In this document: one piece after another, positions 41,533 to 63,814 of the stretch | How the letters are laid out: the number at the start of each line of letters is the position of its first letter | Position numbering within the stretch: the first letter of the stretch is position 1 | DNA from: Styela clava | Lineage: Eukaryota | Assembly: GCF_964204865.1 (NCBI RefSeq) | Contig: NC_135254.1 | Coordinates: 14,198,001 to 14,262,000 of the forward strand | Direction: 5' to 3' | DNA length: 64,000 nucleotides | Program-made: the position numbers and the translations under genes | Notes under the pieces: model-generated | Database searches by the model: none | The model's input: only the letters and a program-made list of their open reading frames with translations | What the model was told of the DNA's origin: nothing

Positions 41533-41559
41533 TATACCGTACCTACTACAACAAAAGAA

Positions 41560-44947: not shown

Positions 44948-47900
44948 TCAAGCGTATTTGTTGAGAGTTCCGACAATCCAATGCATAAGTACAGACGTAT
45001 CCGCGTATAGTCCAGGGTATGGAATACCGTCTTCATCCTTATTGGCACAGCCCCATCCCCAACTGATTATACCAAGCTGAACAAAGCATTTGTCGCCATC
45101 TTTGTTTGTGACCTAAAATTTATAACAAATTGTCATTGAATTTCTCCGAAGATTATATTTTCAATAAATAAACAAGAGAGTAATTCTCAAATATATGGAC
45201 ACGAAAGCCAAAACAAAGTGGTATCAAATCTTTTTCACTTACAGTACCAGTATTCTGACCACTACATTACTGAGATGTTATCACGGAACCACGCAGGTGC
45301 GCAATTTTTCATTTTGATGACGTACAATACACAGAAAAACGAATTCCATACAGGGCACAGGAATAAAAGGAATGGCCCTCTAGCGACAACAACAAGCCTT
45401 AACCACTGAAATTTTCAAAGAAATAAATCCTGTTGTTAAAGAGTAAAGCGACACCAGCAACATAATAACAAACCATCACAGTGTCAGTAAAATACCAGCC
45501 AGATGTTTAGAGAATTGTAGCAGATGTCATATGGAACTGTTACACGATGTCATATAAATCTGTTCCAATGAATTGAAATAAAAATTCTGGGTGAAATAGC
45601 GGGCCCATAGGACTGCTTTAGCATTACATAGAATAAATGAAAAAAATGGAAATTATAGTCTTTTAGCGACGTTTTCCACCTTCACACTCTGAAAATCTGA
45701 AATCCAATAATCCAGTAATTGCCAAAAGCGATTTTTCACAAAAAAAACAATGATTTCTCAAAACGATCCATATGAACACTTCATGTTCTTTAGATTTGTA
45801 CATACCTGTCTTACTAATGGTCCACCGCTGTCACCCTGACACGCATCCCTGCTCGTAGAGTTACCAGTGCATAACATTCTGCTTGTAAATCGAGCGGATT
45901 TATATTGCTCTTTTATGCGTTTAACACCACTTACACAACTGAAAGTAAATAAATCAAATAGAATTTAAACCAACGTTTCTACAATAGACGATACTCCCGT
46001 AGTGTGTGTACCCGGTTAGGGTTAGGGCATAATGTTATTCCGATTTTCAATATTTTAGTTATATTACGAGTTCGGGAATGGAGAGCCCAATCGACAACGT
46101 CTTCATGAATATAGCATTATTTATATAATTATATAGTTGAAAATTGTTTATAAATATAATGATCATTTTAAGCATCATTCACAATCTTGGAATTCTTAAA
46201 CATTCTCATTTTCCTAAATTTTGTGGGAAGTTTTAGTAATTTCTGTACGAACAAGGCTCCGTACACAGCCGTACTCGGAGCGAAAATCGTATAGATATCA
46301 ATCTTTCTGTATCGGTCTGTTACAACCCGGCTGAAATGGTGGACGTTGGCTTGAACTGTTGAACGGTTCTGCATTGGTTACTCAATTTATGATTTAGACG
46401 GGAAAAGTAATACCATAATCTGAATTCTTTTTTTCAATCCAATTTAAACCTTATTATTTGCACAGCTCTGATATGCCCTTTTCTATATTTGTAAAAATAG
46501 CTTCTGATATTGAAATATTGAACATAAAACTTACTCGTCAGATTTAAGAAGTTTTAATAAACTCTGCTGCAACGATTCAGGGAAATCGAATATTTGGCTC
46601 AGCATAGTATTTGGTGTTGTGTCTCCGAATCCCGTTATTACCACGCCGTCTTCTTCCTCCACAGACTTGATTTTCCTACCTGGGATAAAAAAGTTTAAAC
46701 ATAAAGTAAGATAACTCGTTAGATGTTTTTATGGTTGAAATGGGTTGCTACAATAGTCATGTTTCAGCACATGATTATGTGGTTTAACATCGTGTTAAAG
46801 GTACGAAACGCGCCTGCCTTCTGATTACCTTCCGCGGAATCGCAGGTTAGGATCCCTTGATGGTAATTGGGTACGGTATGACTACTAGACTCTCTCTCGG
46901 ACCATTAGTAAAAAGATTCCGGTTCTGACACTCGACTCCGGGTTGACAAAATGTTGACTCCGTGGCATCCGGTTAAAAGAAATTTTGACTATGCTTCCAG
47001 CTCTGAACTCAAAAATTTGATCAATTTTGATACCAAAATTGTTGGCGTATGCATGCCTCCTTTCATTGTCTATTGAAAATGCTTAGTCAGACTAATGCTC
47101 TTCAAGTTCCTGTTGATAAGTTTGAGGTAGATTATCGCCATTTAAAATTCAAAATTCCGACTCCGTCTCAGACTCACTTATATCAATAAAATATTTGTGG
47201 GCTCAGTTGCCCAGAGTTTGAAGCAGTGAGACTTAACCATGGTCACATCATTTGCGTTAAAATCCCATAGCCACAACTTTACTCAGCAGGGTGTAATAAA
47301 TTGGGTAGACAATGTCGAAGCAACAGGAAAAGTTCAAGTCCTCCTAAACCATAGTCGCTTCTTACAAAGCGGTGGCTTCTTGTGCATAGCCTCGTTAAAT
47401 GAAATCATAATCATAATCGTAATCATAAATCATATATTTTCAGTTTTATGTGGAATCCAGTGAAGATTCGTCTTGAAACAAGATTGATACTGCCAGTCTG
47501 CCAGGTAAACAAACAAAACGTTACAATTTTTTCTACATACCATATTTAATGCAACGAGTTTGATCGAAGGAATAAGATGGAATTCCATTTTCAATTTTGG
47601 AATCTTCTTCTATATCGCAAGCACTTATACAAGGCAATGCAACAGGTCTAACATATTGACTGAATGTTATTTCACCATGTGTTGCGTCTTCGTCCACAAC
47701 GAAAACATCATCAGCTATCTTCAGCCGTTTTCCTACTTTAATCTGAACAAAAATTTGTATAGCGTTCTTTCTTAAGCAATTTGACACACATTCTAAGTTA
47801 GAGGTCTTCGGTTTAAGCCCAAGTCCACTCGACTTGACTTGAACTCAGGTACTTTTTCTAAAAACAGGAAGAATTCGAGCCATATTCTATTCATATTTGC

Positions 47901-50900
47901 TCATTTTATTGTTATTTATGTAATCTACAATGACTTGGACTCGTAATGGGTCTCGAAACAAAAACGACCCGAATCGGCTTGTCACTCGCAACCAAAATGA
48001 CTCGACTTGCCATCGAAGTTTAAAATTTGCTGTGACTCGAACCCGGGTGGCTCGTGACTCGATTTGAGACTCGCGACTTAGAGTTATACATTGAATACCT
48101 ACCAGAGCAATATCGTAGTCAAAACTTTTTCTGTCAAATTTTTCATGCTTTGTTGACATCTCAGGCTCAAAGAATTGCACCCAACTTTTGATTTGAGAAT
48201 TTTTCTTTGGTATCTCGGTGACACCTAAACAATATATGGAAATATTTTGTTCTAAGAAACGCATAACAAATATCCTACAGCAGAGATATAATTCTTGCAA
48301 ATGGTGAAAACATTGCTGTCGCGCAATGGTGGAAATATAATGGGAATTGTATTAAATCTGAACAAGTTTGCATACTTCTAGCTATATTCTGAAAAGCTAA
48401 AACATATCAAACTGAATAAAATAAGATGCGACTCCAACCGTCCAAAATTCAATGGCATTATGTCTCATACCTAGTCCCAATATGATCTTCTTCGTCTCCG
48501 CAACAAGATGCGCGGCTGTGAGAATCCATTTCTGATTAATAATCGACGCACCACCCATCAATGAGTCCAAACTCTGAAGAAATATGGAAATGAAACGGCG
48601 TATTTGTACTAAAAGATCATTATAATAAGCTCTGAATAATTCTTTTCCCAACAAGTCACTGCTAGTTAAGGAGCTATAAGGCCCGGAAGGAACAGGCTCA
48701 CCAGGCCTACGAATTCTAGGAAATCAAAATCAAAAGGGGTATGTTACAATAGACGTTACAACACGTTACAATAGAATAAAACGAGAATATCGGTCAGAGA
48801 CCGAAGACTTATTGATCGAAAGTTAGGGGATCCCCCAGAACAGCTCTCTTACTTCATAGTGACACCTAGTGTCCCGTCACTAATTAATCAATAACTCGCT
48901 ACTTATACGACATAATTTGCCCAAAATCAATAGTCTTTTGGTCCGAGATAAGATGAATGCACATGCAAAATCTGTAGCAGATTCAATCTCGCTTTCGTGA
49001 GATATCGCGTGCATCTAACAGACAAACAGACATACAGACAGACAAATACCAACATACTTACCGACTAAAATCGATAAGTAATAATGAATATGCTATTTAC
49101 CATACATTCCTAGTTTTGAAAGTTATTGAACGAACTATTCTAAGAATAGATTCAAATGTCTTACTCTATATAATAAGTTCCTCTCATTTCTAAGTACCAC
49201 AACTTGCCACGGCCATGCGCCAGCTTTTGAAGACTTTCCTCCAATTACACGCTGCAACGAATTTTTTGTTAATATGTTCCCGATGTCGCCAGCTATACCT
49301 GGTGTGTTGAATGCTAAAAAATGATAATTAGTAACCATGAGTTATGAGTAGGCCTACCTTACCTTCCTATTAAGAGCATTTCAATGCCTGAGAATGTACC
49401 AGCCAAATTGTAACTAAATATGGTGCTCTCTTATTTCGCTTAGATTTCATCCTGAATTATGAAAAAACAGTAGCAAAATGTGGAATAAAATGTCGAGTCT
49501 TGGTCCCAAATTGATTAGTAATTGATAATTCTTTCACAAACAAACGAAAACAACAACAACAACTGTCCAGCAAATCAATCTATAGGTCTGCTTCGTGTCT
49601 AATAATATTATATAGTCAAGATTGAAATACTGTGACATTGATCTTGATTTAAGATTCAAAACAACTTACAGAAACATTTTGGAGCTAATCCTGTCCATCT
49701 TCCATCAGATCTGCATACTCGGCTTTGAACACCGGTCAGAATATAACCAGGATTACATCCATAATCTACCTTGTACCCATATGTTTTATGGCCACTGAGT
49801 ATGTAACCATTTTCGGGCAAGTTTAGAGGCTCGCATTCAGCATCTGAAGAAAGTAAAAAACGAGGTTCGTTGCTTGCTCAAATACGATTTTTGAAAACGT
49901 ACCATTATCTCTTGTAAAAATACATCAACCCGATTGAAAACGAGGAACCCTACCCGCCGTTTTCACGCTAATAATCAGGTAATGTGCTTTAAAATTCAAT
50001 ATTTATTATCCTAACCTGGGTTGAAGCATGATTTTCCACACCATCCATCACATAAACATTTATATCCAATTCCTTCACATTGATTATCAGATTCACATTT
50101 AGGAGGACAAGTCATACCATTTTCGACTCTCTTCAAATTTCGTCTGCAACTTCGTGCTAAAATACAATTGAATATTGCTTTGACACCAAATGTATATAAA
50201 TTCGATTCGATCAGAAACTGCTTGCATCATTGGTTTAAAGATCCCCGGGTTTATCTCAAGCCCCAGTAGCTCTCAGCATATCAGTGGTTGCCTGTACAAA
50301 TCATTGTACTGAGAGAAGCCGGTCCCATGAAAAATATATTTATTTGTGGGCGCTGTGGTCTAGTGGTAAAAGCTTTAGACTCAACTATGATGGCATTGCT
50401 GGTTACAATCTCGGGTACAAATTCCATGCCCGTCACCTCGCCTAGTAATAAATGCCCTTAAAATAAAGCATCGTACATATCAGTATCATCTTTTCCATAG
50501 CCTTGTTCGGAGCTAAGCCTTGTTCGAGGCGAAAGACAAACAAATACGTCGTGGAAAATATCACTGGTATTTTCATTTTCGTCTCAAACAACTTACGCCG
50601 CTAAAGCATTAAGCACCAGTATTTTGTAGACCGTTGGCAGCGATTAAGAATTACAGGAATATGAGATAAAAATTGGCTATATGATATTTGAATTTCTTAC
50701 CTGCACAGTATGGAGCTGGACCAGACCATCTGCCTTGTTTCATACATATAATCTTGTTGTCACCCTTCGTTTCATATCCAATATCACATTCAAATGTTAT
50801 TTCGGTACCAAGTGGATGAGGATATTCGTTCGTTGCAGTCATATCGCTGTTAAATGGACGAAAAACCTTCTGACAAGTAACCGTTGGATCTGTAATTATA

Positions 50901-53900
50901 GAAATAAATATTTAAATTTTTAAAATGATATAAACATATTAAAAATGTGACTGTTTCCCAATATAAGCTAACGCCGTTTGTTCAATAAAAAATGTTTTTG
51001 AAATGCATAAAAATTTTAATATCAGAGGAAGTTGGGGCACGCAAACTGTAACCACCGTGTAGCGAATCTAGGCTCAACCAAACCAATGTGCTTTTGATCT
51101 TTGGAAATAGATAATATATTTTCACATGGGCATAAGTTACTGCTTATCTAAACAGAGCATGATTCAGAGAATTATGTACTTAATATTAGGAATGGATATG
51201 TAGTTTCAATTGTCACTTAAATGCCTCCTCTGTACAAGGCTGTTTCTTGCGAGGTTATATACTCATCGAGTTTCACTTTTAGGCAGTTAAAATATGTACT
51301 GATAATAAAGTGCTACTATGCATAAAACAGATGTGGTCCGTCTACCCTTGGATATCCTATTTACAAAATTCTTTTTGCGTTATTCTCACCGAATGCACAG
51401 TCTGGTCTTTTACATTCTGCTACATCTAGATGTGGTCCATCGCATTTTGTCACTTCCATCGCTCCATCGGCACATTTTCTTGTTCGAGTCTTTGTTCCTG
51501 TTCCGCATGTAACCGAACATGCGCCGAAAAGTTCCCAATCTGACCACTTGCCTGTTGAAAAATTCAAAATATTATTTACGCAATAATGAATGTAGTTGGG
51601 TAGGTTAGGAATTTTATATTTATATCGGGGGCGAGGAAAGCCGATAAGACGACTCAATTAAATGGCAAATCACGGCTCCTCGTCCTGTTATCAGTTCATG
51701 TCGGATATGGGGTTAGTTAGCCAGTTGTTTCAGATGCGTGGACATGAAGTCGTAATCGATCAGCGGTTACGCGAACCACCCCTCACGACGGCGAGGAGTC
51801 CAGCAATCCCCTCGCACATAATTAGCTCCCACGGGTCTCCAACCTGCGAATTCGTGCCAGATGGAAAGCGCATACCTTACGATTTGCACGATGCGCCAAA
51901 CGCCGAACCAGACGAACATAGAAACGAAATATTCGAAAACGAAATGAAATTAATTAACCAGTGTTTTGTTGTCATTATTTAGCAACAAAAATTGAAACTG
52001 AAATACAAGCATCTGTTATTTTTTTTATTAAGTACATTCAAGATTACAAGTATCAATGTACTCTTGTATGATATATTTTTGTTCCACCTCTAAGACTAAG
52101 TGAATGATTTTAAACTTAATCGATGTTTCTCCGACTCGTATTACCCAAAGTAAAATATTTCAGAATATCCAACCAGTTCAAATATTGATAGATAAGTTCA
52201 GCCTAGTATATCGCAGCTCTTTCTGGACTAATTCATGATTACTGAAACTGAACTGAAATTACTATAAAAACTAAATCACCAATGAGGTATTTGATTTATA
52301 GTGAAACTGACAAATAGCTAGCAAAATGGGCAATAACGAGTTAATGTTTACAACCGTGCCTAAAAATCTGTCCGAGTGAAAAAAAATGTTTATGAGCGGA
52401 TAAAATTCCACTGTTGTGTCACTTTTAACATCTCACTGACAAGCCAATCTTACAGACAGAATCAAACGAATGCTTGGAGAAATGTTACACAAAAACAAAG
52501 AATCAATTTAAAAATGGAGGCACCCACATTCTGGTTTCTCGCATCTTCTATGTTGCGTCCTTCTTCCAACGCATCCACCTTTACCAACTTCACCGCCGAT
52601 GCAAGTTCTTGTACGACGACTTATACCGGATCCACAGGGTACAGGACAATCCTCCCATTTTTGCCAGTCACTCCATCTACCTGTAATATCCAACGATATA
52701 TCTCAATCGAATAATTCATTGAACGACGATTGTAATTTCCATGCATCGAACCCACAAAATACGGTAGAGACTGACTTATCATTAGTGCTTGTCTATAGCC
52801 TTATTCAAAGCAAACCAACCTACGAAAATGTGTCACATTCGTAAAACTGTACATGAAGATTGTCTTGGACATTTTCTTCGTATGCTGATAGTTAAACTGC
52901 AATTCATATAAGTGTGTCGTCATAAAGAGAACACTCTGGTTTGTCGCACACAACAGTTACATACGTCAATGGTAACAACATTGAAATTTTTTTCATAAAA
53001 TCCCTGCTCACAAACGGTGCCAGTTTGAGAAACGTTTTCGCCACTGACTGACTCAGTTGTCCTACACGAACCTATCGATTAAGTACATATATGACACTCA
53101 TGCATACAGAACCTTTTGTGTTGCATGGGGTTTCGTTACAAATCCTTGCTTGTTCTGGATCTCCTTGACATTCTCCAGGTTTTGAGCAGGTTCTTGACCT
53201 TGCTTGTGTACCAGAACCACAGGACACGGGACATGCGCTCCAGTCAGACCAAGGCATCCAAGTAGCTTGGGGTTCTAAGACATAAGTGGGCTATAAGTTT
53301 GAATACATTACAAGGTGAATATAAAGAAAAAATATGTAAGGCCCTATAACTGACCCGTGTCGCACTCCATATCATTGCACATTTGCGATTCTTGGCCTCC
53401 TTCCTTGCATCCTTCATCACCAATACTTCCACCTTCACATTTCCTTATTCTCAAAGATAGCCCGATACCACACGAAGCAGAACATATACTCCAATCACTC
53501 CAATCTCCCCAACCTATAGAAAATGGTGTAAAAGAAACGCTTAAAGATTTAGGGTTTTTGTTCTGAATTTAACGCGACGATAACACGTCAAACTGAAAGA
53601 TTCAAACCATTTTTATACAACGCTGGAAAGATCGGAATTTTTCGGTTTGACATTAACTACAAACTCCGCCCTGAGTGGGACTCGTACACAAGATTTTTAC
53701 CTGCGAGGTACCATCGTTAAGTCTAACGATTTAACCACTAGGCCATTGCAATTGTTTTTTGCGTCACTTGTCAATTGCGGTTGAACCATTATATCTCTGC
53801 TTCCAAATTATTATTTTTTTGTTTAATTCTGGTTGCTTGTACAGAGCGTTGTTCTGAACGAAACGCGTGAATAAACGTCTTATATATAAACTGCCAAGTG

Positions 53901-56900
53901 GAAAGAGAGTGAGTAGAAAATTTAAAAAAAACTATGACTCACTTGCTGCACCGTTACAATCATCTTCTTCACAAATCTCTGAGTCTTTAGCTTTCCCTTC
54001 ACAATTGTCTCCTCCATCACATACTCGAGTCCGTGATATTGTTCCTATACCACAGGTCACAGAACAAGTAGACCAATTTAACCAGTTGTTCCACGTTCCT
54101 AAAACAAGTGCTTTATTTATTTATAGTCATAAAACTTCATGAAAAACGACTAATAACCAAGTAAAGTTGTATTCAGATGTAAGGTTGCAGTCACATCTCA
54201 TTTCCCATTTCGAAGATGGAAACCTAGCAGCAAATTATTTAAACTATTTTGCCGTTGGGTGATTCGAACCTAATGTCCTCTTTCTCACCCACAGTGTAAT
54301 AAATTGAGTGGGAAATGCCAAATCAAAATTCCGATTCTTCTAAAAATGATAGCTTTTTACATTATAAGTCTTCATTCAGAGTGAATCTACTTTGACATGT
54401 TTTAATTCATCTTTCCTTTTTATTAGTAAAAAGCTTACCCATCGTTAAACATTTATTCGTGTTGCATTCATCCGTCTGTTGATCTTCACCAAAGCATCCT
54501 GGGTTGCCAACCTTTCCGCCCAAACATTCTCTACTCCTGGATTTGCTTCCTCCCCCACAAGTAACAGAACATTTACTCCAGGTGGTCCATCTCGACCATT
54601 TAGCTATAAAAATGATTAAATATTATTGATATGACATAAAATATTTATTCTATTTTACTCAAATCTAAAAATATGATTCCAAAGACATTACAACATACTA
54701 TATAGTTAGATATTAAATACATAGAAAAATATTTAATAGACTCGATGTAATGTAATAACAAATAACAAAAGAGCAATGCCAAATACACGGGCATAAAGGC
54801 CAAAATAAATGTTGCAAAATTCCATCAAAGTTTTAAATAGATATTACTTAAAAATGTGACATGAAGATGTGTCCAAGAAATATTGAAACCAGCAAAATTT
54901 TGAATTGAAATATCGGTTCCGGTAGTACTCGAAAAAAAATTATATAAAATAAAAACAATAGCTTTCTAGCGATTATCAATTACAGAAATGGAAAATTTGT
55001 TAGTCGATTAGTTGCCTTGAAATTTTCTTCACAACAACAATAACAACTAGAACAGAACAACAATTTAGCCAATTTATAATTCCACTTAGGGTCCAAAAAT
55101 GCCCAAAATACCATCACTATGTCTATATTCATCACATTACCATTGCAAGAATTTCTACCATTTAAACTTTGATAACTCAGCACATCCAAGACAATGATAT
55201 GTATTAAGACCAAATAGGACAAAAGCAGGTAATTAAGTTAAGGAATTAATATCCTACCTTTATCCTCGATTAAAAAGAGGAAAACCTTTAAATAGATACT
55301 GCTAAGACAAAGCCACAAATAACATTGTACTTATATATATATGTTTATATATGTGACTTACCATCAACTCTACAAGCAGGTCTGAAGCAATTTTTTATAG
55401 CTTCATTATCTCCCCTGCAACCTGTGTCACCAATATTTCCATCGATACAGATTCTTTCTCTTGTTGTCTCTCCTCGACCACATGATACTGAACACGTTGT
55501 CCAGGTTGACCATTTGCTCCATAATGCTGCGTTAAATACAAGTTCGAACAATTTATTCCAAAACTTTTCTAACACCTCTAAGATAATTTGAAAGATTTAA
55601 TTAACACTTGAACCTTTGTTTGAGAATGATTGTACCCAAAAGTTTCAAAAATTTAAGACGCTTTTCACAAAAATGATGTTCTACCTAGAATATGTTCCAA
55701 ATGACCTAGGTTTTTTTGGGGCTACTCTGTCTTTATGACTTCATCTACAGATCTAACAATAGAATACAAGCTAGAGACAAGCGCTTTCGGCATAACTAAA
55801 TTGAATTTTCTTTTTGTTTATGCGGTATGACCTATCTGTTATTCTATTGTATACTCAAAACCAATTAGAGGTAAATTCTGCGCAGTTTATTACACTTTGT
55901 TTGTATTTTTTTTTGCGTGTATGACACATAGACACATTTATCACTATACACAATTCTGAAACCCGAACAGACGGTTTATCCTTTCTCCATCGTGTTTTAG
56001 GCTTTATTTTATCCCGCAAAGTAAGATTGACAATTTAGCACTTTTATATCTCCTATTAAATCGCTACCTTTTGCGAACACAATTCCCAAGAAAGCGACAT
56101 TTTACGGTAATGTAATTTACCGGGAAAGGACTTCTGCGCGAATGTAGTATAGAATTAATTAATAGTGTAAATGTTTGGTAAATAATCAGTAAGAATAAAG
56201 TAAAAGAGTAAAGTAAAGTACCTCGTTTACATGGTGGTCCGTCACATACATCTTTCATTATTAAACTTCCCAGGCAGCCAGGTTGCCATTGCCTCCCATC
56301 TATACAAGTTCTGGTACGACTCCTTTCACCATTACCACAGGTCGTACTGCATTCACCCCAATCACCCCACTCTGACCATTTGGCTGAAAGACAGTGGAGA
56401 AATATTTATTAGTATGTATCATAGTCAGATATTTTCATGATCATGTAATGAATTGTTCTTGTTGTATGTCTTAGTCCAATGCACGTCTCAAATGGTGCAA
56501 CAGACGAACACAATGATGAGTTAAAACTTGCGTCAACATGACGTTTAATGCGACTTCTAATCGTATTTTCGATATGACGTTTTTTCGTGCCGTTTTCGAA
56601 TTAGCCTCAAAACACGAAGCCATCGATATGGAAGTTTCATTATAATTCGACATAAACAGAATCTTTTTATTTCGGCATTGCCTACCCAGTTTAATAAAAC
56701 CCACTTTTAAGGGATTATTTTAGTTTTAGGCCTAATTAAGAACTCCAAAAAAGAATTCATCCAATTCGGTCTAAAATTTTCGAATTTGAGTCACTGTCTT
56801 TCTGCTACAAAAATTAATTTTCTGTATAAAAATTAAACTGTCTAATCTTTGTATCCGTATAATTAATAATAAATACAAACCCTTGATACAATCTACAGTA

Positions 56901-59900
56901 TTGCATTCTGAAGTTTCCTTCTCGTCTCCATCACATTCTCCTTGGGCACATTTTCTACTTCTCGAGATTTCACCGGTGCCACAACTGACTGTACATTTAC
57001 TCCAGTCACCCCATGGGCCCCAGATACCTATAAAATATAATTCCCGTAAAACGTTTCACTTATTCTCGATTGTATATATTTATATGTGGTATTTTGAACT
57101 TTCCGAACTTATCCCTCTAAAAAAATCATTTTCAGTCGTCAAATCTGTCGGTTAGCTCATTGCTATGTAAAGCAACGTTGCCAAATTATCTTGTGGGCGT
57201 ATACGTAACAGTGTTGGGCATGCCCGAGTCACTGACTCAACTTGAGTCATACTCAAGTTACCATATATTAAAAACTCGAATTGTCATGTCAAGTAAATGA
57301 CTCGGACTCGTCATCGACCAACCACCAGTAGGCAGAACCCAGTGTTTGACTTGACTTTGGACACGGACTCGAGGCTCGTATGGCCCGTGACTCGACTCGC
57401 GACTCGAGCGTTGGGGACTTATACCCATTCGAGTATCATACTTTGCCATATAATCGAATATTTAAAAATATACGATGTTTTCAATCACATTTACCTGCAG
57501 AGCACGATTGAGTGTTACATCTTTTGTAACCATAGTTATCGCCTTGACAGTTTTTCGACGGTGTTGGTTCTCTACATCTTCTTAATCTGTAATCAAATCC
57601 GCCTCCACATGATTTATGGCATCCGTTCCAATTTGCCCAGTCTTCCCATCCAGCTGTTACATAGACGGTAAGTTGTTACGATGTCTCAAGTATACCGCTA
57701 AAGTGGATTTATTGATAAAATGACTTACAACCACACTTTTCCATGTCGCATGTTGTTTCTTGTTCTTCCTCACATGATCCTACTTTACAAAATCGTTTTC
57801 TTTTGGATATCCCAGATCCGCATGTTACGCTACAGGGACCCCATGGTTCCCATTCCTTGTAATCGGCTGAACAAAATTAGAAGAAAAAAAAATTCGATTG
57901 AGTTCCAAAAACTATGTGGTTTTAATAGTGTCTCGTAATAACGACAGCTAACAAACAATTATCAGCAAAATAATACTTTGCGGGGCAAAGGTTCTTTTTC
58001 ATTATTCCAGTGTGTAAGCAGGTCGTGAAACTGACACCAAGTACAGTTTATATTCAAGTCACAAATTTATCGCAAAATGACAAACATATTTATTCTTATG
58101 CAATAAAAGGTAATGTAAAATCGTTCCTGAGGCCTAGTAATTTACAGCAATATCCTATTTTAAACTACCAATGCACCGACCAAATGCTTTTTTTATTTGA
58201 GAGTTAAAATTTTATTGTGGTCCTTTAAGTTTTAAGAATTGCACATTTAATCCGATGACTTTCGGCATTGCCTGCGCAATATATCATTCCCCTGGTGGAA
58301 GAGTGGGAATCAAATTTGAACTTGGGTTTTTATCCTGCGACACTATCATAATCAAAACTGGCTGCCACTCCCACCAAGAGAAAGTATTGAAGATTAATTA
58401 TAAATAGAACAACTTTCCAAAGATATTCTTATTGCTTTAACTATATTATAGCTATCTACCTTTTATGTCCAAATATTATACATCTAAATTCTAATTTCTC
58501 AGGCTAGTGAAGGTAATCACTGAAGTAAGACCTCCATGGACGTTAAGACTGTGCTTGTTAAAGGATGTGTGAGCTTTGTTCAATGAATTATAAGTATTTT
58601 TATTATATACGTACGTGGACAAGCCTCTATTCTACATGTCTTTGAGGACGTCTGTTCGCATGTTCCAACATTGCAATATCGTTTTCTTATTGAAAATCCA
58701 AATCCACACGTTTTGCTACATTCACCCCATTCCTGCCAAGGCCCGTACTTTTCCCCGACTGTGAAAAATAAGAACCTTGACAAACATTTCAAATAATAAA
58801 GATGCCATGCTGTTTGCCGGGCAGTGTTGGTGAGACTCGAGTCATTGACTTGAGTCTTGACTTTCTCACAGACTAAGTTGAATGACTAAGGAATGACTAG
58901 AGTTATCTAAATGTAATGACTCTAGTCATTGACTTGCTTCACCATTCATCAAACACTAGAAGTGACTCGAGTCAACTGAATGAAATAGCTAAGTCATCGC
59001 CTTAATTTACCATTTATCAAAGACTAGAAGTGACTCGAGTCATCCTAATTAACTTAATTAACCATTTATCAAAGACTAGAAGTGACTCGAGTCATCTAAA
59101 TGAAATAACTCGGGCTCGTCATCAAGTAACCCCTAGTGATACTTAATCAGTGAACGAATCAACCACGGACAATATTTTGTAAGTTCAAAGTTGATTAAAG
59201 TTCAATAACCATGATCACGAATTGATTTTGTATTGATAACAACGTAGCTAAAGGGGCGAAAAATAGTCAATATTTATTCTATGACTTCATAACGATTATC
59301 CAATTATTTCTTTCTGAATATTGTCATGTCTTCGTTGGAGAGGGTATCGTGCTAACGATACAAAAACAATCTAGAAACTCATACTCGTGGTTTAGAAAAT
59401 CAACAGATTATCTGTGAATTTCGAGGGAATCATAATATATATTTAGGGACACTAAAGCTGGTTCTCCATATCCCAGTCTGTTTACCTGTTTTGTCAACTC
59501 GTAAATACGTGAGATAGTGGAAAATGAAATGAAAAATTTGAATGAATTCGAGTTATGAATTAGGACAGGCTATATCTAATAATAAAGACAAAAAAATTAT
59601 TAGTCGTATATATATTTTCAATATTTGTCTCACGGTTAGTTTCGCAATCTTCCATTTTACAAGAGCTTGATTCTGTGTCTCTGCACGATCCTATTTTACA
59701 AAAACGAACTCTGGATCTAACTCCTGTGTCACATGTCACGCTGCATCCAGACCAAGGCATCCAATCAGCGTATTTGTCTGGGTCTGCAGAAATAAATCAA
59801 CGGAAATGAGTAGTATAATCAGAATGTCTAATTTCGCCAAAAGTAATTAAGTTATTGTCTAGTTTGAAAACTTGCTTTTTTAAAGACAAGCGTGATTGAA

Positions 59901-62900
59901 TATAAAGTAGGACACCTGATACTCGTAGTATATTCGAATGAAAGTCAAAATGCTGTCCATGCATCGGAAATGAATACCTGGCTAACAATTCCCATAATTG
60001 ACGAGATAAAGGAAAACTTTATGTTATGAAAACCGGCAAATTACACAAATTTTATATGTATAAAAATCTGTTAAAGTTTCGAATGAAAAAGTAATAGTGA
60101 TCTTCATTTATAAGTATAGCAAAACTATGAGTTAAATGAAAACAATTATAATTCAATTCTTCATTTATACCCCATATACAGTCGCAAGGTGGGCATGCTT
60201 CGATCGATCTCCATTTTAGCGCGCCTAAACACCAAGATAGGTGAGATAATTGTAAATGCTATGAAAAATGTGCAATTATTATTTGCTTGGTACCAGAGCA
60301 GCCAATTTATTTTTAAAGTAGTTTACTAAGATCGTGTTTTCAAAACTAAAAATTTTATAAAAATAGTCGAAAATCATTCATATAAATTTATTATCATGAG
60401 AAATATGACATATTATTTCAAAAAAATATTAATAAATATAAATTGAAAGCGCACTAAAATTATAAAAAAAACTTTCGGTTTTCAGATTCTAAGTATACGC
60501 ATTTTTATTTTATTCCAGATAGTCAGACCGTTGCGTCATTTAATACTCGACCGTGTTTGTGTTCAAAACGGGCCTTACCTCGATCATATCTATTTTTGAT
60601 AAAATAAAATTAGAAGTGAACAATTTTTAATTTATTCAAACTTTTATTTTGAATGAAAGCCTATCAAATTAATAGGCAGAATATTCATAATAAGATCACT
60701 TGAACTAAAAAAAAAAAAATTGAACACGAAGTGGAAATATTAATTGTTTAACTAAATAATTTTTGAAGTTGTTATTGGGATTGTTGTTATTAAGGGAAAA
60801 TAGCTTATTTCCGCGACTACGAATCGATTCTGAAGAGAAGGCTAGTACATCAACTTTTTTTAAATTTTAAATTTTTGAGGGCCAACAGAGCCCGATATTT
60901 TACCACACATTTTGCTGTTTTATATTAATGCATGGGAATGCTGTTTTGACGCTCGTGGTATTAGGTATAGGCAAGTCCACCGCTTTCCCGACCTTCCCGA
61001 CAATGAGCTAGCACCGTAGCGAAAGCGGTGGACGATTTGGAGCATTTTAATGATAGATTTTTGTGTAAATTTAGCATTAGGCTGTATATTGCTGGTCAAT
61101 CAGCCGTGATTCTTAAACTCTCATGATCTAAGCTGCCTATCTGCAGACTTTAAACACTGTCCACTTACAAAAAAATACCTGGTTTTGCATTTAACGCGTT
61201 TCCTACAGTTATTTTATGCGCTCAAAATGCCAACACACGAAAGCTAAATGTACCAAAGTCAAAGAATAAAACAAATTACAGTTAATTCATTTTAAATTAA
61301 TGTAATTATTGTGAATGGTTTGTAGTGAGGATTACGATTGTGGCCCCAGAGCACCGCTCCGTGGCCCGTTTGGGGGCAAAATTTCCATTCGCTAAATCCT
61401 ACAAAGAACCTTCGTGTTCAGATATCGAGCTCTAATACTTTGATTATTGAATTTTAAAGAAACTCGAAGAACATTCTGCTTTTTTAAATGCATCAGCATA
61501 ACACACACCTTCATCCAAACATCGTCGTATATTACAATATGTAAGTTGTTCTTGAACGCTCGATCCTTCCGGATATGACCTTGATCGTTTCATTTCTCCG
61601 GCACCGCATGTTGCGCTGCATGCTGACCAAGGACTCCATTCACCTTGTTTCGGAGAAGCCACCGCTATATGAGAATGAAAGCATGACATGCTAAATCAAT
61701 CAATCAAAAATGTCATGCATATTGGAAGCAACGATCCAATGATGGATTTGATCAGAAACGTGAAGCTATGTAATGAATTTTTAAAAGATGACGGTGTCGC
61801 GACAGACTATAATAAAAATAATCCTAAGCTGTTTTTATTGAATTGAAAGCTCATCATTTTATTATCCGTGGAAAACCAGTACAGCGGTCAAATATCCGTT
61901 TAAATTGTTTACGAAAATGTCAAACAAATTAAGTTATATATCATTAGAAAATTTCTGGAATTTGTATAATTTTAAATATGGCAGTGAAGGCTTGATGTGC
62001 GTTTGTCAATCAACGTTTGAAACTTTTACACTACAATGAAATATATTCTAGATATCTTAGTAAGTCCAAACGCAGGCCAACATTTACAAAAATTCCTACA
62101 GATCTTTTGTACAAAGCCCCCACCAAAAAAAGCATCCCCGCCAACGCCAAAATAAAAAAAAAATAAATTATCCAGTTAGGGTTAAGAATGCAGATTGTGC
62201 TGGAAATTTAAATTTCCAAGTCATTCCTAACACTAACTCCAACCTCCATTGGATAGTTAACGAGGCGAGGGTGTTTTTTTCTAATCTCACATTCTTGGCA
62301 GGGACTTTGCACATAAGATCCCAATATACTTTCTAACATATATGTGGAGGGTGAAGTATTATATTTTGGATATACACGTACGCTTTTCTGTAACAGTGCA
62401 ACTTGGTTGTCTGCATGTTCTTGTGTTAACTTCGACACAACCGCCTACTTTACAACGTCGTCGTCTTGTTTCTTTGCCTGATCCACATGTGACGTCACAC
62501 GCTGACCAATCTTCCCATGAATGAAATTGTTTATCGTCAGCTGAGAATAATTTTTTACATAAAATTGAGTTTTTTTGTTTAATCTTAATTTATCAATTGT
62601 TATTTTTTTCATTCTAATCAAAAAGCGCGATCAAGGAAGGCCATGTAAAAATATCACAGATTCTGAATATCACACTACTCTTGGGCAATAATAGACGTTT
62701 TGCTGTGATTTTGTCACGGTGTATTTACATAGATAGTCTATACCAGGGGTGGGCAAAGTTTTTGAACCAGGGGGAAAAGTTACATTTCATGAATAATATT
62801 TACAGTGTTACAAAGCGAAGGTGGAAAACAATAAGCCCCGTGCCAAAACTAAATTTACCCGCAATCTCAACAAATTCCTCGAGCTATTTTAGCTGAAACA

Positions 62901-63814
62901 TCAATTTTTTCACATTTTTTTCAATTTGGTTGATAGTTTGGTTGGCTAATAGGTAAGATCTATTTCAGGATTTAATCGAATGAGGAAAATAGCAGACGGA
63001 GTGAAAGTCGCAAGGTCAGCAATGGCGGTATTATTAAAACACACGCTTTCGTAATTAATCCTTGAATATAGGAAAGATCGAGTCGTCGAATTAATTTTGT
63101 CTCTCTATCATTACGCAATGTCTCAAAAATGCAAACCTAAGACTAATAAACAACGGTGTTTACATTTTTATAAGTCTGCTTTTTTTCTAATTATATTTTA
63201 GAAATTGTTTTTAGATTTGTATGAGCATGTTTTTATTTTTCGATGAAACTTCGAAAAATAGTTAAACCCCCGACCAGCACCAAATTGGATGACTACTCCC
63301 GCAGGCTGGCGCCCGAACGGCTGTGCTAAAAAGGTGTCACTCAACAGTCAAATATCAACTATGAGTGTAGCTTACGTTTGTGCCACTTGTAATATAGCCT
63401 ACAACCTCTTGAATTTAAAAAAGTGTGGTTGTTCGGAGAAAAATCTTTTTTTGTACCTGGAGATACCACGCTACCAACTGTATTTTATGGAATTATCGTA
63501 TTCTGATGGAAAATACTTACTACCACTATCCTGCGACTTAGATTATTTCTACATTATTTCATTCCTAATTTAGGGTACTTCTAAATTGCACCAGTTTGAA
63601 TTAATAAATTAAATTACTGGCGCTTGTGACCTGCCATTTATGTAATACTTACGTCCAGCACAAACCCTTTCCCGACAAGACTTCTCTGCCTTTTCAACAC
63701 AGCCTCCCAATCTACATCGACGTTGTCTGGTTTGTTTTCCTATTCCACAAGTAGCACTGCAAGGAGTCCATTCTTCCCATGACAAAAACTTGCCAGTAAT
63801 TGGTTTCGGGTCAG
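44948..63814 (-). CDS. Mosaic extracellular trypsin-family serine protease: (TSP1)x>=16 - CCP - WAP - CCP - S1A protease; 5' end beyond the window
   Basis: TSP1 exons (WxxWxxCSxTCG..R.R.C): 63653-63814, 62382-62540, 61509-61664, 59634-59783, 58615-58758, 57729-57866, 57495-57653, 56881-57027, 56222-56383, 55362-55526, 54439-54603, 53943-54098, 53355-53513, 53113-53274, 52528-52680, 51390-51551. CCP 50701-50889; WAP 50016-50156; CCP 49670-49843. Protease exons: 49165-49313 (R|VIGG..AWPWQV), 48471-48573 (WILTAAH), 48103-48224 (DYDIAL), 47541-47742, 46535-46679 (ITGFG), 45806-45938 (DACQGDSGGP), 44948-45112 (GIISWG..PGLY, TGA). Confidence 0.92.
48780..49087 (-). mobile_element. DINE-1/HINE-like element, second copy (protease intron)
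   Basis: Reverse-complement match to 33695-33995 (GTGAGATATCGCGTGCATCTAACAGAC). Confidence 0.7.
51660..51912 (-). mobile_element. GC-rich SINE-like element with tRNA-related head
   Basis: GC/CpG-rich island in an AT-rich intron; related partial copy at ~46775-46885 (CGCAGGTT..GATCCC) and a matching 3' piece (ATCCGACATGAACTG-like) near 14878. Confidence 0.5.
53660..53750 (-). mobile_element. tRNA-derived SINE head
   Basis: TGGCCTAGTGGTTAA...GTACGAGTCCCAC A/B-box-like motifs; a similar head lies at 50348-50445 (+). Confidence 0.5.
58822..59135. repeat. GACTCGAGTC-rich repeat (MITE-derived), with related copies at ~47820-48080 and ~57210-57440
   Basis: Starts CAGTGTTGG; three tandem ~60-bp units ACCATTTATCAAAGACTAGAAGTGACTCGAGTCA. 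Confidence 0.75.

What the first reader, a model, noticed from the sequence alone, without database searches (positions are those of the whole stretch)
44948..63814. Properdin-like TSP1 array fused to CCP-WAP-CCP and an intact complement-like protease
Seen: at least 16 TSP1 modules, then CCP, WAP and CCP, then a zymogen site (QR|VIGG) and a complete triad (TAAH, DIAL, GDSGGP) with Asp189 (trypsin-like specificity). Established: properdin is built only of TSP1 repeats and stabilises the C3 convertase; C1r/C1s/MASP and factor B/C2 carry CCP modules with their protease domains. The segments RPVALPC and FVQLGIISWG recall factor B/C2 (RPICLPC, FIQVGVISWG). I know of no characterised protein with this domain order. 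Inference: a lineage-specific innate-immune, fertilisation or matrix (tunic) protease carrying its own surface-binding stalk, possibly a properdin-plus-protease 'one-chain' system.
Basis: partly seen in the sequence, partly recalled or inferred. Interest (0 to 1): 0.85.

Follow-up and report, generated by a model that had tools for sequence, protein, structure and literature searches.

The report
Sea-squirt factor-B-type protease on TSR stalk
This is a real, expressed gene of the sea squirt Styela clava that joins 24 thrombospondin-type repeats to a trypsin-like protease descended from ascidian complement factor B; the design is unusual and has not been studied, but the gene is already predicted in RefSeq and belongs to a larger ascidian gene family.

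Summary
The gene lies on the minus strand. It has 26 coding exons in the window (44948-63814) and 11 more up to 7.8 kb beyond the window's end.

It encodes a signal peptide, 24 TSP1 repeats (16 in the window), CCP, WAP, CCP and an intact S1 protease. The protease has R|VIGG, His/Asp/Ser, Asp189, an AGC Ser195 codon and no histidine-loop cysteines.

Spliced RNA contigs from four runs in two studies join the TSP1 exons to the protease exons, so this is one transcript. It is Styela clava LOC120344501, named 'SCO-spondin-like' or 'uncharacterized' in RefSeq (1528-1808 aa isoforms).

The protease domain sits inside the ascidian complement factor B clade (100/99 support) but lacks factor B's VWA domain. 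It belongs to a Styela family with a CCP-WAP-CCP-protease core (at least 10 loci, mostly on one chromosome) and varied add-on domains.

This gene alone has lost both cysteines of the bridge that ties the catalytic domain to the stalk. Activation probably releases a free protease.

The TSP1 array is generic, not specifically properdin-like. I found no paper on the gene or this architecture. The scan's only earlier notes are two on this same window. Its biological role is untested.

The parts
63653..63814 (-). TSP1 repeat 9 exon (first one inside the window), phase 1-1
   Evidence: PF00090 E 4.3e-7; GT-AG junctions reproduce P0015
62382..62540 (-). TSP1 repeat 10 exon
   Evidence: PF00090 E 1.8e-6
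61509..61664 (-). TSP1 repeat 11 exon; degenerate, with the middle cysteines replaced
   Evidence: PF00090 E 3.6e-7, N-terminal half only; sequence
59634..59783 (-). TSP1 repeat 12 exon
   Evidence: PF00090 E 2.6e-6
58615..58758 (-). TSP1 repeat 13 exon
   Evidence: PF00090 E 1.3e-7
57729..57866 (-). TSP1 repeat 14 exon (last of the short WxxW type)
   Evidence: PF00090 E 2e-10
57495..57653 (-). TSP1 repeat 15 exon (first of the WxxWxxW type)
   Evidence: PF00090 E 4.7e-6
56881..57027 (-). TSP1 repeat 16 exon
   Evidence: PF00090 E 1.7e-8
56222..56383 (-). TSP1 repeat 17 exon
   Evidence: PF00090 E 2.3e-9
55362..55526 (-). TSP1 repeat 18 exon
   Evidence: PF00090 E 1.4e-9
54439..54603 (-). TSP1 repeat 19 exon
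   Evidence: WxxWxxW and CSVTCG motifs; one of the 24 TSP_1 stretches in P0001
53943..54098 (-). TSP1 repeat 20 exon
53355..53513 (-). TSP1 repeat 21 exon
53113..53274 (-). TSP1 repeat 22 exon
   Evidence: present in spliced RNA contigs
52528..52680 (-). TSP1 repeat 23 exon
   Evidence: joined to its neighbours in RNA contigs
51390..51551 (-). TSP1 repeat 24 exon
   Evidence: spliced to the CCP1 exon in RNA contigs
50701..50889 (-). CCP (Sushi) module 1 exon, phase 1-1
   Evidence: PF00084 E 7.5e-11; RNA joints
50016..50156 (-). WAP four-disulfide-core module exon; 8 cysteines, with CxC in place of the usual CC
   Evidence: PF00095 E 2.2e-5, 25.1 bits against cut-off 20.8; 5 of 6 paralogous exons also hit PF00095; best solved relative is elafin; RNA joints
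49670..49843 (-). CCP (Sushi) module 2 exon
   Evidence: PF00084 E 2e-10; RNA joints
49165..49313 (-). Protease exon 1: linker without the family's cysteine (TPGIAGD where paralogs have CGQAGD) and the activation site SLQR|VIGG
   Evidence: RNA joints; Thr codon at 49303-49305 unchanged in RNA
48471..48573 (-). Protease exon 2: His57 (TAAHL); no Cys42 or Cys58
   Evidence: PF00089 E 1.4e-5; RNA joints
48103..48224 (-). Protease exon 3: Asp102 (DYDIAL)
   Evidence: RNA joints
47541..47742 (-). Protease exon 4: RPVALPC (Cys122 replaced by Ala, codon 47638-47640) and the factor-B-type insertion with its cysteines
   Evidence: 100% match to residues 1582-1648 of P0001; RNA contig
46535..46679 (-). 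Protease exon 5 (VVITGFG region)
   Evidence: the loose end of the RNA contig at 47538 continues into this exon's sequence
45806..45938 (-). Protease exon 6: Asp189 and Ser195 (DACQGDSGGP); Ser195 codon is AGC
   Evidence: PF00089 E 3.8e-9; codon read
44948..45112 (-). Protease exon 7: SWGWGC, Pro225-Gly226, C-terminus and the TGA stop at 44948-44950
   Evidence: PF00089, weak; trypsins are the best solved relatives; sequence

Best explanation
This is Styela clava gene LOC120344501. It is one secreted mosaic protein of about 1800 residues. The order is: signal peptide, 24 TSP1 repeats, CCP, WAP, CCP, then a catalytically complete trypsin-like S1 protease.

Shown:
- The protease domain is a VWA-less offshoot of the ascidian complement factor B lineage.
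- It belongs to a tandemly expanded Styela family with a CCP-WAP-CCP-protease core and varied add-on domains.

Inferred mechanism:
- The protein is secreted as a zymogen.
- The roughly 100 nm TSP1 rod, which carries C-mannosylation and O-fucosylation motifs, parks the zymogen on sulfated glycans, matrix or foreign surfaces.
- An Arg-specific protease, or a neighbouring molecule, cuts at Arg|Val-Ile-Gly-Gly.
- This gene alone has lost both cysteines of the linker-to-Cys122 bridge. The roughly 38 kDa catalytic domain is therefore no longer covalently tied to the stalk.
- It is released, or held only non-covalently, and cleaves after Arg or Lys.

The most likely setting is a humoral, complement-related or other extracellular proteolytic cascade. 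Confidence by layer: identity and architecture about 0.95; factor B descent about 0.85; release on activation about 0.5; immune role about 0.4.
For: One gene:
- Spliced contigs in runs X1, X2, X4 and X5 (two studies) join the TSP1, CCP, WAP, CCP and protease exons with GT-AG introns.
- The exon map reproduces RefSeq isoform X1 exactly.

Identity: an exon search returned the cluster XP_039269683-9 / LOC120344501 at 100% identity.

Domains.

Catalytic competence:
- R|VIGG, His57, Asp102, Ser195, Asp189, Gly193 and Gly216/226 are all present.
- 10 of 12 differences between RNA and genome in coding exons are synonymous.

Factor B descent:
- Halocynthia Bf scores 5e-53 at 32% identity.
- Shared motifs include CGQAGD-type linkers, RPVCLPC plus an insertion, C(F/W)VQ(I/L)GIVSWG, and the absence of the histidine loop.
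- In the careful tree, the branch separating the Bf-containing group from the nine other proteases sampled has 99/96 support, the ascidian clade 100/99 and the Styela family 95/89.

Family:
- At least 10 loci carry the same exon cassette.
- Add-on domains vary between members.
- One member lies next to a VWA-bearing Bf-type gene.

Lost disulfide:
- In the 13 aligned ascidian sequences that span the linker, only this one lacks the linker Cys and the first Cys of CLPC.
- The remaining 8 cysteines form 4 consistent pairs.
- Both codons are unchanged in the RNA contigs.
Against: - There is no tissue, protein or activity evidence. The run metadata are coded, so the role is inferred from ancestry alone.
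- Without the VWA domain the protein cannot work like factor B.
- A rigid CCP2-protease interface could keep the chains together without a disulfide, as is known for C1r, C1s and MASP.
- MASP, C1r, C1s and vertebrate Bf/C2 sequences could not be fetched, so the tree tests factor B descent only against TMPRSS9, ovochymase, ST14, plasminogen-like and factor C-like domains.
- Solved human factor B and C2 are not among the best structure-database matches.
- The assignment of the lost cysteines to one disulfide rests on covariation and on recalled knowledge of the chymotrypsinogen Cys1-Cys122 and factor B disulfides. It was not checked on a structure.
Confidence: 0.6

Rival explanations
1. The reader's one-chain properdin-plus-protease reading. 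The TSP1 array does what properdin does, binding and stabilising surface-bound C3b. The attached factor-B-lineage protease cleaves C3, so recognition, stabilisation and convertase activity sit in one polypeptide.
For: - The protease domain is of factor B descent.
- Bf-type proteases are fused to TSP1 arrays repeatedly: three more Styela loci; C-terminal TSRs in Styela P0198 and P0220; a complete CCP3-VWA-protease followed by 14 TSRs in Clavelina P0180; and one TSP1 unit in a spider Bf model, P0280.
- Properdin is among the best solved matches to repeats 19-24.
Against: - There is no VWA/MIDAS domain. From established knowledge of C3bBb, that domain is what holds factor B on C3b.
- Similarity to properdin is generic: about 17 bits per repeat, against about 30 for thrombospondin-1.
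- PF22195 stays below its cut-off on every exon, and no TB/TSR0-type N-terminal domain was seen.
- The stalk-to-protease disulfide is lost in this very gene, so the active enzyme need not remain on the stalk.
- No binding or cleavage data exist.
Confidence: 0.12
2. A gamete or fertilisation protease. It would be a serine-protease counterpart of the ascidian Tast proteins (astacin plus TSP1 repeats on the sperm surface), with the TSP1 array binding the egg coat.
For: - Ascidian sperm use TSP1-bearing proteases to penetrate the vitelline coat (PMC6353882, PMC11673157; found).
- Trypsin-like specificity fits the known ascidian sperm proteases (my own recollection, not checked).
- Expression is sample-specific: five RNA-like runs hold the transcript and three runs of another study hold next to none.
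Against: - There is no membrane anchor.
- The catalytic class and ancestry differ from Tast.
- The nearest relatives are complement factor B genes.
- No gonad or sperm expression data are available here.
Confidence: 0.12
3. An extracellular-matrix or tunic remodelling protease. It would act in development or tissue turnover, as ADAMTS enzymes do, with the TSP1 array as a matrix anchor and no link to immunity.
For: - TSP1 arrays are typical matrix anchors. RefSeq names the paralogs 'ADAMTS-like' and this gene 'SCO-spondin-like'.
- The signal peptide and the lack of an anchor fit a secreted matrix protein.
Against: - The RefSeq names rest on the TSP1 repeats alone. Pfam finds no reprolysin, disintegrin, VWD or LDLa domain.
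- The protease ancestry and the rapidly diversifying tandem family look more like an immune-type expansion.
- That argument is circumstantial.
Confidence: 0.14
4. An annotation artefact. The TSP1 exons and the protease exons would belong to two neighbouring genes, or the locus would be a decaying pseudogene.
For: Gnomon models of neighbouring family members can look like fusions. P0007, for example, contains two protease units.
Against: - Single assembled transcripts of up to 4.6 kb cross from the TSP1 exons into the protease exons in four runs.
- There is no stop or frameshift in the 37 exons.
- Polymorphisms are mostly synonymous.
Confidence: 0.02

Closest known systems
Ascidian complement factor B (Halocynthia roretzi Q9BP40, 'C3/C5 convertase'; Ciona Bf-1 to Bf-3)
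   Same: - The protease domains fall in one well-supported clade (100/99) at 32-37% identity.
- Shared features are the CGQAGD-type linker, R|V(V/I/L)GG, the absence of the histidine-loop cysteines, RPVCLPC plus a Cys-bearing insertion, and C(W/F)VQ(I/L)G(I/L)(V/I)S(W/F)G.
- CCP modules sit upstream of the protease.
- WAP modules also occur in VWA-bearing Bf-type proteins of Clavelina and Styela.
   Different: - There is no VWA domain and no LDLa module.
- Two CCPs are split by a WAP, where factor B has a CCP run before the VWA domain.
- A 24-repeat TSP1 array sits at the N-terminus.
- The linker-to-Cys122 disulfide is lost.
MASP / C1r / C1s
   Same: - CCP modules lie directly before a zymogen-type protease that is cut after Arg.
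- The Ser195 codon is AGY and there is no histidine-loop disulfide, as in the MASP-2/C1r/C1s lineage (established knowledge).
- Both are modular recognition-plus-protease proteins.
   Different: - There are no CUB-EGF-CUB modules.
- The protease domain is split into seven exons.
- A WAP sits between the CCPs.
- The interchain disulfide is missing.
- Kinship was not tested in the tree because no MASP, C1r or C1s sequences were available.
Properdin
   Same: - It is a secreted array of TSP1 repeats with WxxWxxW and CSxTCG motifs.
- It is among the best solved matches to repeats 19-24 (E 9e-29).
   Different: - Properdin has seven repeats, no protease and an N-terminal TB-like domain, and it forms oligomers.
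- Here the similarity per repeat is lower than to thrombospondin-1.
- PF22195 is below its cut-off.
Tast proteins (tunicate astacin-like metalloproteases with TSP1 repeats)
   Same: They are ascidian proteins that join a protease to a run of TSP1 repeats (PMC6353882, PMC11673157).
   Different: - The catalytic class differs: a metalloprotease there, an S1 serine protease here.
- The domain order differs.
- Tast proteins are reported on the sperm surface (PMC6353882).
- The ancestry is unrelated.
Limulus factor C
   Same: - It is a mosaic pattern-recognition zymogen with CCP modules next to a trypsin-like domain.
- RefSeq names several relatives 'clotting factor C-like'.
   Different: - Factor C has EGF, LCCL and C-type lectin modules and no TSP1 or WAP.
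- A shrimp factor C-like domain fell with the outgroup in the tree.
SCO-spondin / ADAMTS (the RefSeq names of this gene and its paralogs)
   Same: They carry many TSP1 repeats.
   Different: None of the other defining domains (VWD, LDLa, EMI, CTCK; reprolysin, disintegrin) was found by Pfam. The names are by-products of the repeats.

Membership tests
S1 (chymotrypsin-fold) serine peptidases | His57-Asp102-Ser195 triad with the GDSGG oxyanion motif | tested here: met
   TAAH, DYDIAL and GDSGGP are present. PF00089 matches exons 2, 6 and 7 and scores 118 bits on P0001.
S1 (chymotrypsin-fold) serine peptidases | Zymogen activation site that yields an (I/V)(I/V)GG N-terminus, with Asp194 present | tested here: met
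   SLQR|VIGGK, and the D of GDSGG.
S1 (chymotrypsin-fold) serine peptidases | Trypsin-like S1 pocket (Asp189, Gly216, Gly226) | tested here: met
   DACQGDSGGP, SWGWGC and YPGLY, read. Assignment is by alignment only; no activity was tested.
Complement factor B / C2 | Protease domain groups with factor B proteins | tested here: met
   Ascidian Bf clade 100/99. The branch separating the Bf-containing group from the nine other proteases sampled has 99/96 support. Vertebrate Bf/C2 and MASP were not in the tree.
Complement factor B / C2 | VWA domain with a MIDAS site between the CCPs and the protease | tested here: not met
   CCP2 ends at residue 1469 and the protease linker starts at 1471. Pfam finds no PF00092 in P0001, although it finds it in the relatives P0007 and P0049.
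Complement factor B / C2 | Run of three or more CCPs at the N-terminus | tested here: not met
   Two CCPs are separated by a WAP and preceded by 24 TSP1 repeats.
Complement factor B / C2 | CLPC cysteine pair with the linker-to-Cys122 and Cys125-to-insertion disulfides | tested here: inconclusive
   Every ascidian Bf-type domain in which the motif could be read has C-L-P-C. This gene has A-L-P-C and lacks the linker Cys. The second pair is kept. Assignment to disulfides is by covariation and recall.
MASP / C1r / C1s | CUB-EGF-CUB N-terminal region | tested here: not met
   Pfam on P0001 shows only TSP1-type and Trypsin families.
MASP / C1r / C1s | AGY Ser195 codon and no histidine-loop disulfide (MASP-2/C1r/C1s lineage) | tested here: met
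   The codon is AGC. MGGASII...TAAHL has no Cys42 or Cys58. The whole ascidian Bf clade also lacks the loop, so this is not specific to MASP.
MASP / C1r / C1s | Intron-less protease domain (MASP-2/C1r/C1s lineage) | tested here: not met
   Seven protease exons, four of them confirmed by RNA joints.
Properdin | TSR-only protein with an N-terminal TB/TSR0 domain and the special C-terminal TSR (PF22195) | tested here: not met
   PF22195 scores 14-21 bits on single exons against a cut-off of 27. The protein starts with an ordinary TSR straight after the signal peptide and ends in a protease.
TSP1 repeat (PF00090) | WxxW, CSxTCG and six cysteines in about 50 residues | tested here: met
   24 of 24 repeats have WxxW, 9 have WxxWxxW and 23 have Cxx(S/T)CxxG.
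WAP four-disulfide core (PF00095) | Eight cysteines in the WAP spacing, with a score above the Pfam cut-off | tested here: met
   25.1 bits against 20.8. Five of six paralogous exons match. Elafin is the best solved match. The central CC doublet is CxC in all six.
Tast (astacin plus TSP1) | Astacin metalloprotease domain | tested here: not met
   No astacin family among the Pfam hits of P0001.
SCO-spondin / ADAMTS (RefSeq names) | VWD, LDLa and CTCK domains, or reprolysin and disintegrin domains | tested here: not met
   None appears in the Pfam scan of P0001.

The most novel reading that the evidence does not exclude
TSP1 arrays fused to factor-B-lineage proteases may be the invertebrate-chordate counterpart of properdin: a built-in surface or C3b-binding module of the alternative-pathway protease. 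The fusions seen are this gene, three more Styela loci, and a Clavelina model with a complete CCP3-VWA-protease plus 14 TSRs. In this particular gene the system has gone one step further. The VWA domain and the stalk-to-protease disulfide are both gone, so surface docking of the zymogen is coupled to release of a soluble Arg-specific protease. That would be a new way to start or spread a complement-like cascade.
Probability: 0.12. Interest if true: 0.85.

Novelty: new variant of a known kind. Interest (0 to 1): 0.58.

Why it matters
Ascidians are the closest living relatives of vertebrates. Their complement system has C3, factor B and MASP, but no properdin is recognised (my recollection, not checked here).

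This locus shows that the ascidian factor B protease domain has been copied many times and shuffled onto TSP1, EGF, lectin and CCP arrays. Here it sits on the longest TSP1 array of the set. That gives concrete, clonable candidates for three questions:

- How did recognition modules and complement proteases come together?
- Do TSP1 arrays act with factor-B-type proteases outside vertebrates?
- What does a WAP module do inside a protease?

The paired loss of the two bridge cysteines is a clean natural experiment on tethered versus released catalytic domains. If the role turns out to be matrix or gamete biology instead, the gene is still a clear example of exon shuffling with phase 1-1 modules.

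Tried and rejected
- **Searching my own spliced model.** Whole-protein searches used the database protein P0015/P0001, which the exon search returned and which the exon map reproduces exactly.
- **Human factor B or C2 motifs.** The best matches were trypsins, kallikreins, factor XIa/Xa, tryptase and prostasin.
- **P0003.** This 3387 aa ENA protein looked like a strong hit to protease exon 4. It carries only low-complexity families and was dropped as spurious.
- **Sushi and WAP in the whole-protein Pfam scan.** They did not appear in the scan of P0001, although the single exons score well. I trust the exon results and suspect a filter effect in the long Cys-rich protein.
- **Very high read depth at 48779-49172 and 51734-51930.** I suspected small RNA genes. 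There is no Rfam family or tRNA. Both are interspersed repeats, with about 3200 and about 780 first-look matches in the genome.
- **Vertebrate Bf/C2 and MASP sequences for the tree.** My last protein search, seeded with P0085, returned chelicerate, amphioxus and hemichordate Bf but no vertebrate Bf/C2 or MASP. P0085 turned out to be a spider Bf.
- **Literature.** Searches for the gene id, protein accessions, 'SCO-spondin' with Styela clava, and the domain combination found nothing relevant. A findings search by words also gave nothing.
- **Not attempted.** I ran no structure prediction or complex prediction. The tools cannot take a sub-range of a long protein, and domain contacts in such a model would not have settled the disulfide question.

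Full report
**What is there**

The window has no N runs and about 35% G+C. Between 44948 and 63814, on the minus strand, lies a series of short stop-free segments. Each encodes one protein module.

Pfam, run exon by exon and by reference, gave these results:

| Module | Window coordinates | Pfam result |
|---|---|---|
| TSP1 repeats (first ten tested) | within 55362-63814 | TSP_1, E 2e-10 to 5e-6 |
| CCP1 | 50701-50889 | Sushi, E 7.5e-11 |
| WAP | 50016-50156 | WAP, 25.1 bits against cut-off 20.8 |
| CCP2 | 49670-49843 | Sushi, E 2e-10 |
| Protease exons 2, 6, 7 | 48471-48573, 45806-45938, 44951-45112 | Trypsin |

The protease reads SLQR|VIGG, TAAH, DYDIAL and DACQGDSGGP, followed by SWGWGC and YPGLY. 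Activation site, triad, oxyanion motif, Asp189, Gly216 and Gly226 are therefore all present. The Ser195 codon is AGC. There is no cysteine at position 42 or 58.

Its end coordinates are the stop codon and the acceptor site of the first TSP1 exon inside the window.

**The gene runs off the window**

The window is G000:C5:14198001-14262000. I fetched the next 30 kb. The first 8 kb of it holds eight more TSP1 exons, two short spacer exons and a signal-peptide exon. The full gene has 37 coding exons over about 26.8 kb.

Junctions and phases:
- 35 of the 36 junctions were solved as GT-AG pairs that reproduce the database protein exactly.
- The one junction my script did not solve (T01 to T02) lies outside the window.
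- All TSP1, CCP and WAP exons have lengths divisible by three and are phase 1-1, the classic substrate for exon shuffling.

The repeats fall into two kinds. Repeats 1-14 are short, about 43 residues, with WxxW. Repeats 15-23 are longer and have WxxWxxW. Repeat 24 is as long as repeats 15-23 but has only WxxW. Repeat 11 has lost its middle cysteines. Of the 24 repeats, 23 carry the Cxx(S/T)CxxG O-fucosylation consensus and all carry WxxW.

**One transcript**

Five runs of the same organism hold about a fifth of the sampled words of 47400-53300, which fits exons only. I laid four of them, from two studies.

- In all four runs, contigs skip exactly the predicted introns. The skipped stretches end in CT..AC on the plus strand, which is GT..AG on the gene's strand.
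- In three runs a single record joins TSP1 exons 22, 23 and 24, CCP1, WAP, CCP2 and protease exons 1-4. The longest is 4643 nt.
- That record has 2.3 kb of further sequence upstream and 0.7 kb downstream.
- Its loose end at 47538 continues into the sequence of protease exon 5.

The runs are only guessed to be RNA, but spliced joints are themselves evidence of processed transcripts.

Twelve differences between these contigs and the genome fall in coding exons. Ten are synonymous, as expected for a gene under purifying selection.

**Identity**

Protease exon 4 (67 aa), searched against 1.84 billion representative proteins, returned a 1795 aa protein at 100% identity over residues 1582-1648.

Its cluster consists of Styela clava XP_039269683-9 and later versions, gene LOC120344501. 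The first annotation called it 'SCO-spondin-like' and the current one calls it 'uncharacterized protein'. Isoforms run from 1528 to 1808 aa. The stated contig length equals that of C5.

Isoform X1 (P0015) begins MDYIKGFLLLFFILGVES and continues straight into the first TSP1 repeat. It maps exactly onto the genome. The predicted isoforms differ by skipping the spacer exons and TSP1 exons 2-6, and by a change in exon 8. All keep the CCP-WAP-CCP-protease end.

From here on I used P0015 and P0001, which are database proteins with ids, for whole-protein searches.

**A family, and its origin**

In the same genome, the WAP exon and protease exon 4 each find many further copies, paired 2-4 kb apart. 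They lie mostly on C5, at 10.34-10.38, 14.11-14.13, 18.80-18.85 and 20.19-20.46 Mb. One pair is on C1. Five loci that I fetched show the same exon cassette: CCP, WAP, CCP and protease exons.

The add-on domains differ between members:
- no add-on at all;
- three further protease domains;
- EGF arrays;
- CCP runs with C-type lectin and TSP1;
- C-terminal TSP1-CCP-TSP1;
- N-terminal TSP1 arrays of at least 7, 14 and 17 repeats in three other loci.

A search with the C-terminal 507 residues of P0015 found these relatives:
- the Styela paralogs, at 37-40% identity;
- Clavelina lepadiformis proteins with WAP, Sushi, Trypsin and often VWA;
- Halocynthia roretzi complement factor B (Q9BP40, 5e-53, 32% identity), the best named protein with a single protease domain.

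The alignment shows that the resemblance to ascidian factor B is specific. Both share:
- a CGQAGD-type linker;
- an R|V(V/I/L)GG site;
- no histidine-loop cysteines;
- RPVCLPC followed by a Cys-bearing insertion;
- TGFG;
- C(W/F)VQ(I/L)G(I/L)(V/I)S(W/F)G.

I built a careful maximum-likelihood tree of 46 protease domains. Rows left out: long-branch second domains of P0002 and P0033, and redundant isoforms.

| Split or grouping | Support (bootstrap / SH-aLRT) |
|---|---|
| Branch separating the Bf-containing rows (ascidian, amphioxus, hemichordate, chelicerate, myriapod) from the TMPRSS9, ovochymase, ST14, plasminogen-like and factor C-like domains used to root the tree | 99/96 |
| All 28 ascidian rows | 100/99 |
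| The Styela CCP-WAP-CCP-protease family, including this gene | 95/89 |

Two points follow from the tree:
- VWA-less members of Ciona and Clavelina nest within their own species' factor B groups. The VWA domain seems to have been lost more than once, unless some gene models are incomplete.
- At C5:10.37 Mb a VWA-bearing Bf-type gene lies 2 kb from a family member, which fits origin by tandem duplication.

Solved human factor B and C2 are also not among the best structure-database matches to the protein or its exons.

**A feature peculiar to this gene**

In the 13 aligned ascidian sequences that span the linker, 12 have a cysteine in the linker about 17-20 residues before the cleavage site. Every ascidian Bf-type domain in which the motif could be read has C-L-P-C. 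This gene has TPGIAGD and A-L-P-C, so both cysteines are gone.

A second, independent pair also covaries across the family: the extra Cys in PCxxxC with the Cys in C(F/W)VQ. This gene keeps that pair.

Its protease region thus has eight cysteines, which make four consistent pairs. By analogy with chymotrypsinogen Cys1-Cys122, and with the factor B disulfides as I recall them from UniProt P00751 (not checked here), the lost pair is the bridge that keeps the catalytic chain on the heavy chain after activation.

The two codons (49303-49305 and 47638-47640) show no difference in the RNA contigs. The inference is that cleavage at Arg|Val frees the catalytic domain from the TSP1-CCP-WAP-CCP part, unless a non-covalent CCP2-protease interface holds it.

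**The other modules**

The WAP assignment holds. Five of six paralogous exons reach the Pfam threshold, and a profile of them finds elafin as the only solved relative. The usual central CC is CxC in all six. What a module best known as a serine-protease inhibitor does next to a protease is open. Self-inhibition of the zymogen is a possibility that I did not test.

The TSP1 array is not specifically properdin-like:
- Properdin's repeats score 102 bits over about 300 residues.
- Three repeats of thrombospondin-1 score 90 bits over about 160 residues.
- The properdin C-terminal model stays under its cut-off on every exon.

**Reading**

The evidence supports the following with high confidence: a secreted, catalytically competent, Arg/Lys-specific zymogen of factor B descent on a very long TSP1 stalk.

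The proposed mechanism is an inference from the anatomy: docking by the stalk, cleavage at R|VIGG, and release of the catalytic domain. The physiological setting is the weakest part. Ancestry and the tandem, fast-diversifying family point to humoral defence. A gamete role remains open, by analogy with the ascidian Tast proteins (PMC6353882, PMC11673157). So does a matrix role.

It is kept alive by the repeated fusion of Bf-type proteases with TSP1 arrays. One example is a Clavelina RefSeq model with a complete CCP3-VWA-protease followed directly by 14 TSRs.

**Novelty**

The gene and its paralogs are automated RefSeq predictions with misleading or empty names. I found no paper that mentions the gene, its accessions or this domain order. 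The ascidian factor B literature that I could see cited covers the canonical genes only (Ji et al. 2000 and Yoshizaki et al. 2005, from the reference list of PMC5465252).

I class it as a new variant of a known kind: a mosaic S1 protease of the complement factor B lineage.

Both agree with what I found. Nothing was noted on other DNA.

Noticed in passing
window 48779-49172 and 51734-51930 (introns of the gene): Read depth was 10-100 times that of the exons. Both stretches are interspersed repeats. The first is about 310 bp, with 91-93% identical copies on many contigs and about 3200 first-look matches. The second gives about 780 first-look matches. No Rfam family or tRNA was found.
   Followed up: yes
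window 39618-41542, minus strand: Two long open frames (346 and 232 aa) look like the reverse-transcriptase and C-terminal parts of a non-LTR retrotransposon. They lie just downstream of the gene. Not run against Pfam.
   Followed up: no
window 727-2784 (+) and 5938-6912 (+): Two long intron-less open frames of 685 and 324 aa. The first ends in stretches that look like PTB/PDZ-type adaptor sequence. The second is Lys/Ser-rich with a SAP-like C-terminus. These are impressions from reading only and were not tested.
   Followed up: no
G000:C5:14113192-14133923 (65-85 kb before the window's start): A family member with one CCP-WAP-CCP-protease unit followed by three further protease domains (P0002/P0032, RefSeq 'TMPRSS9-like'). 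Four copies of protease exon 4 lie within 20 kb.
   Followed up: partly
P0180 (Clavelina lepadiformis LOC143455431, 1702 aa): A RefSeq model with three CCPs, a VWA-sized gap, a Bf-type protease and then 14 TSP1 repeats starting 3 residues after the protease. That is a complete factor B with a C-terminal TSP1 array. It could be a fusion of two gene models. No RNA check was done.
   Followed up: partly
P0280 (Argiope bruennichi, 1747 aa): A spider factor-B-type model that also carries a TSP1 unit and many CCPs. The Logan proteins P0085 and P0090, which I first took for unknown Bf, group with chelicerate Bf.
   Followed up: partly
Family protease domains P0007 domain 2, P0033 domain 2, P0199, P0035 domain 2: Several relatives have lost Ser195 (GDNGGP or GDGGGP), so they are probably inactive protease homologues. 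This gene keeps the full triad.
   Followed up: partly
Alignment; window 47541-47742 and 44951-45112: A second cysteine pair covaries perfectly across the family: the extra Cys in PCxxxC with the Cys in C(F/W)VQ. It is present in ascidian Bf, the Clavelina members and this gene, and absent in five Styela paralogs. It is probably a lineage-specific disulfide.
   Followed up: partly
G000:C5:10383339-10384246 (locus A) and G000:C1:16074001-16074267 (locus D): In two paralogs a TSP1 exon follows the last protease exon within 65-350 bases. This matches RefSeq models with C-terminal TSP1-CCP-TSP1 (P0198, P0220).
   Followed up: partly
window 62800-62905: The first 105 bases of my locating query are another abundant repeat, with 86-95% identical copies on most contigs and about 2600 first-look matches.
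   Followed up: no
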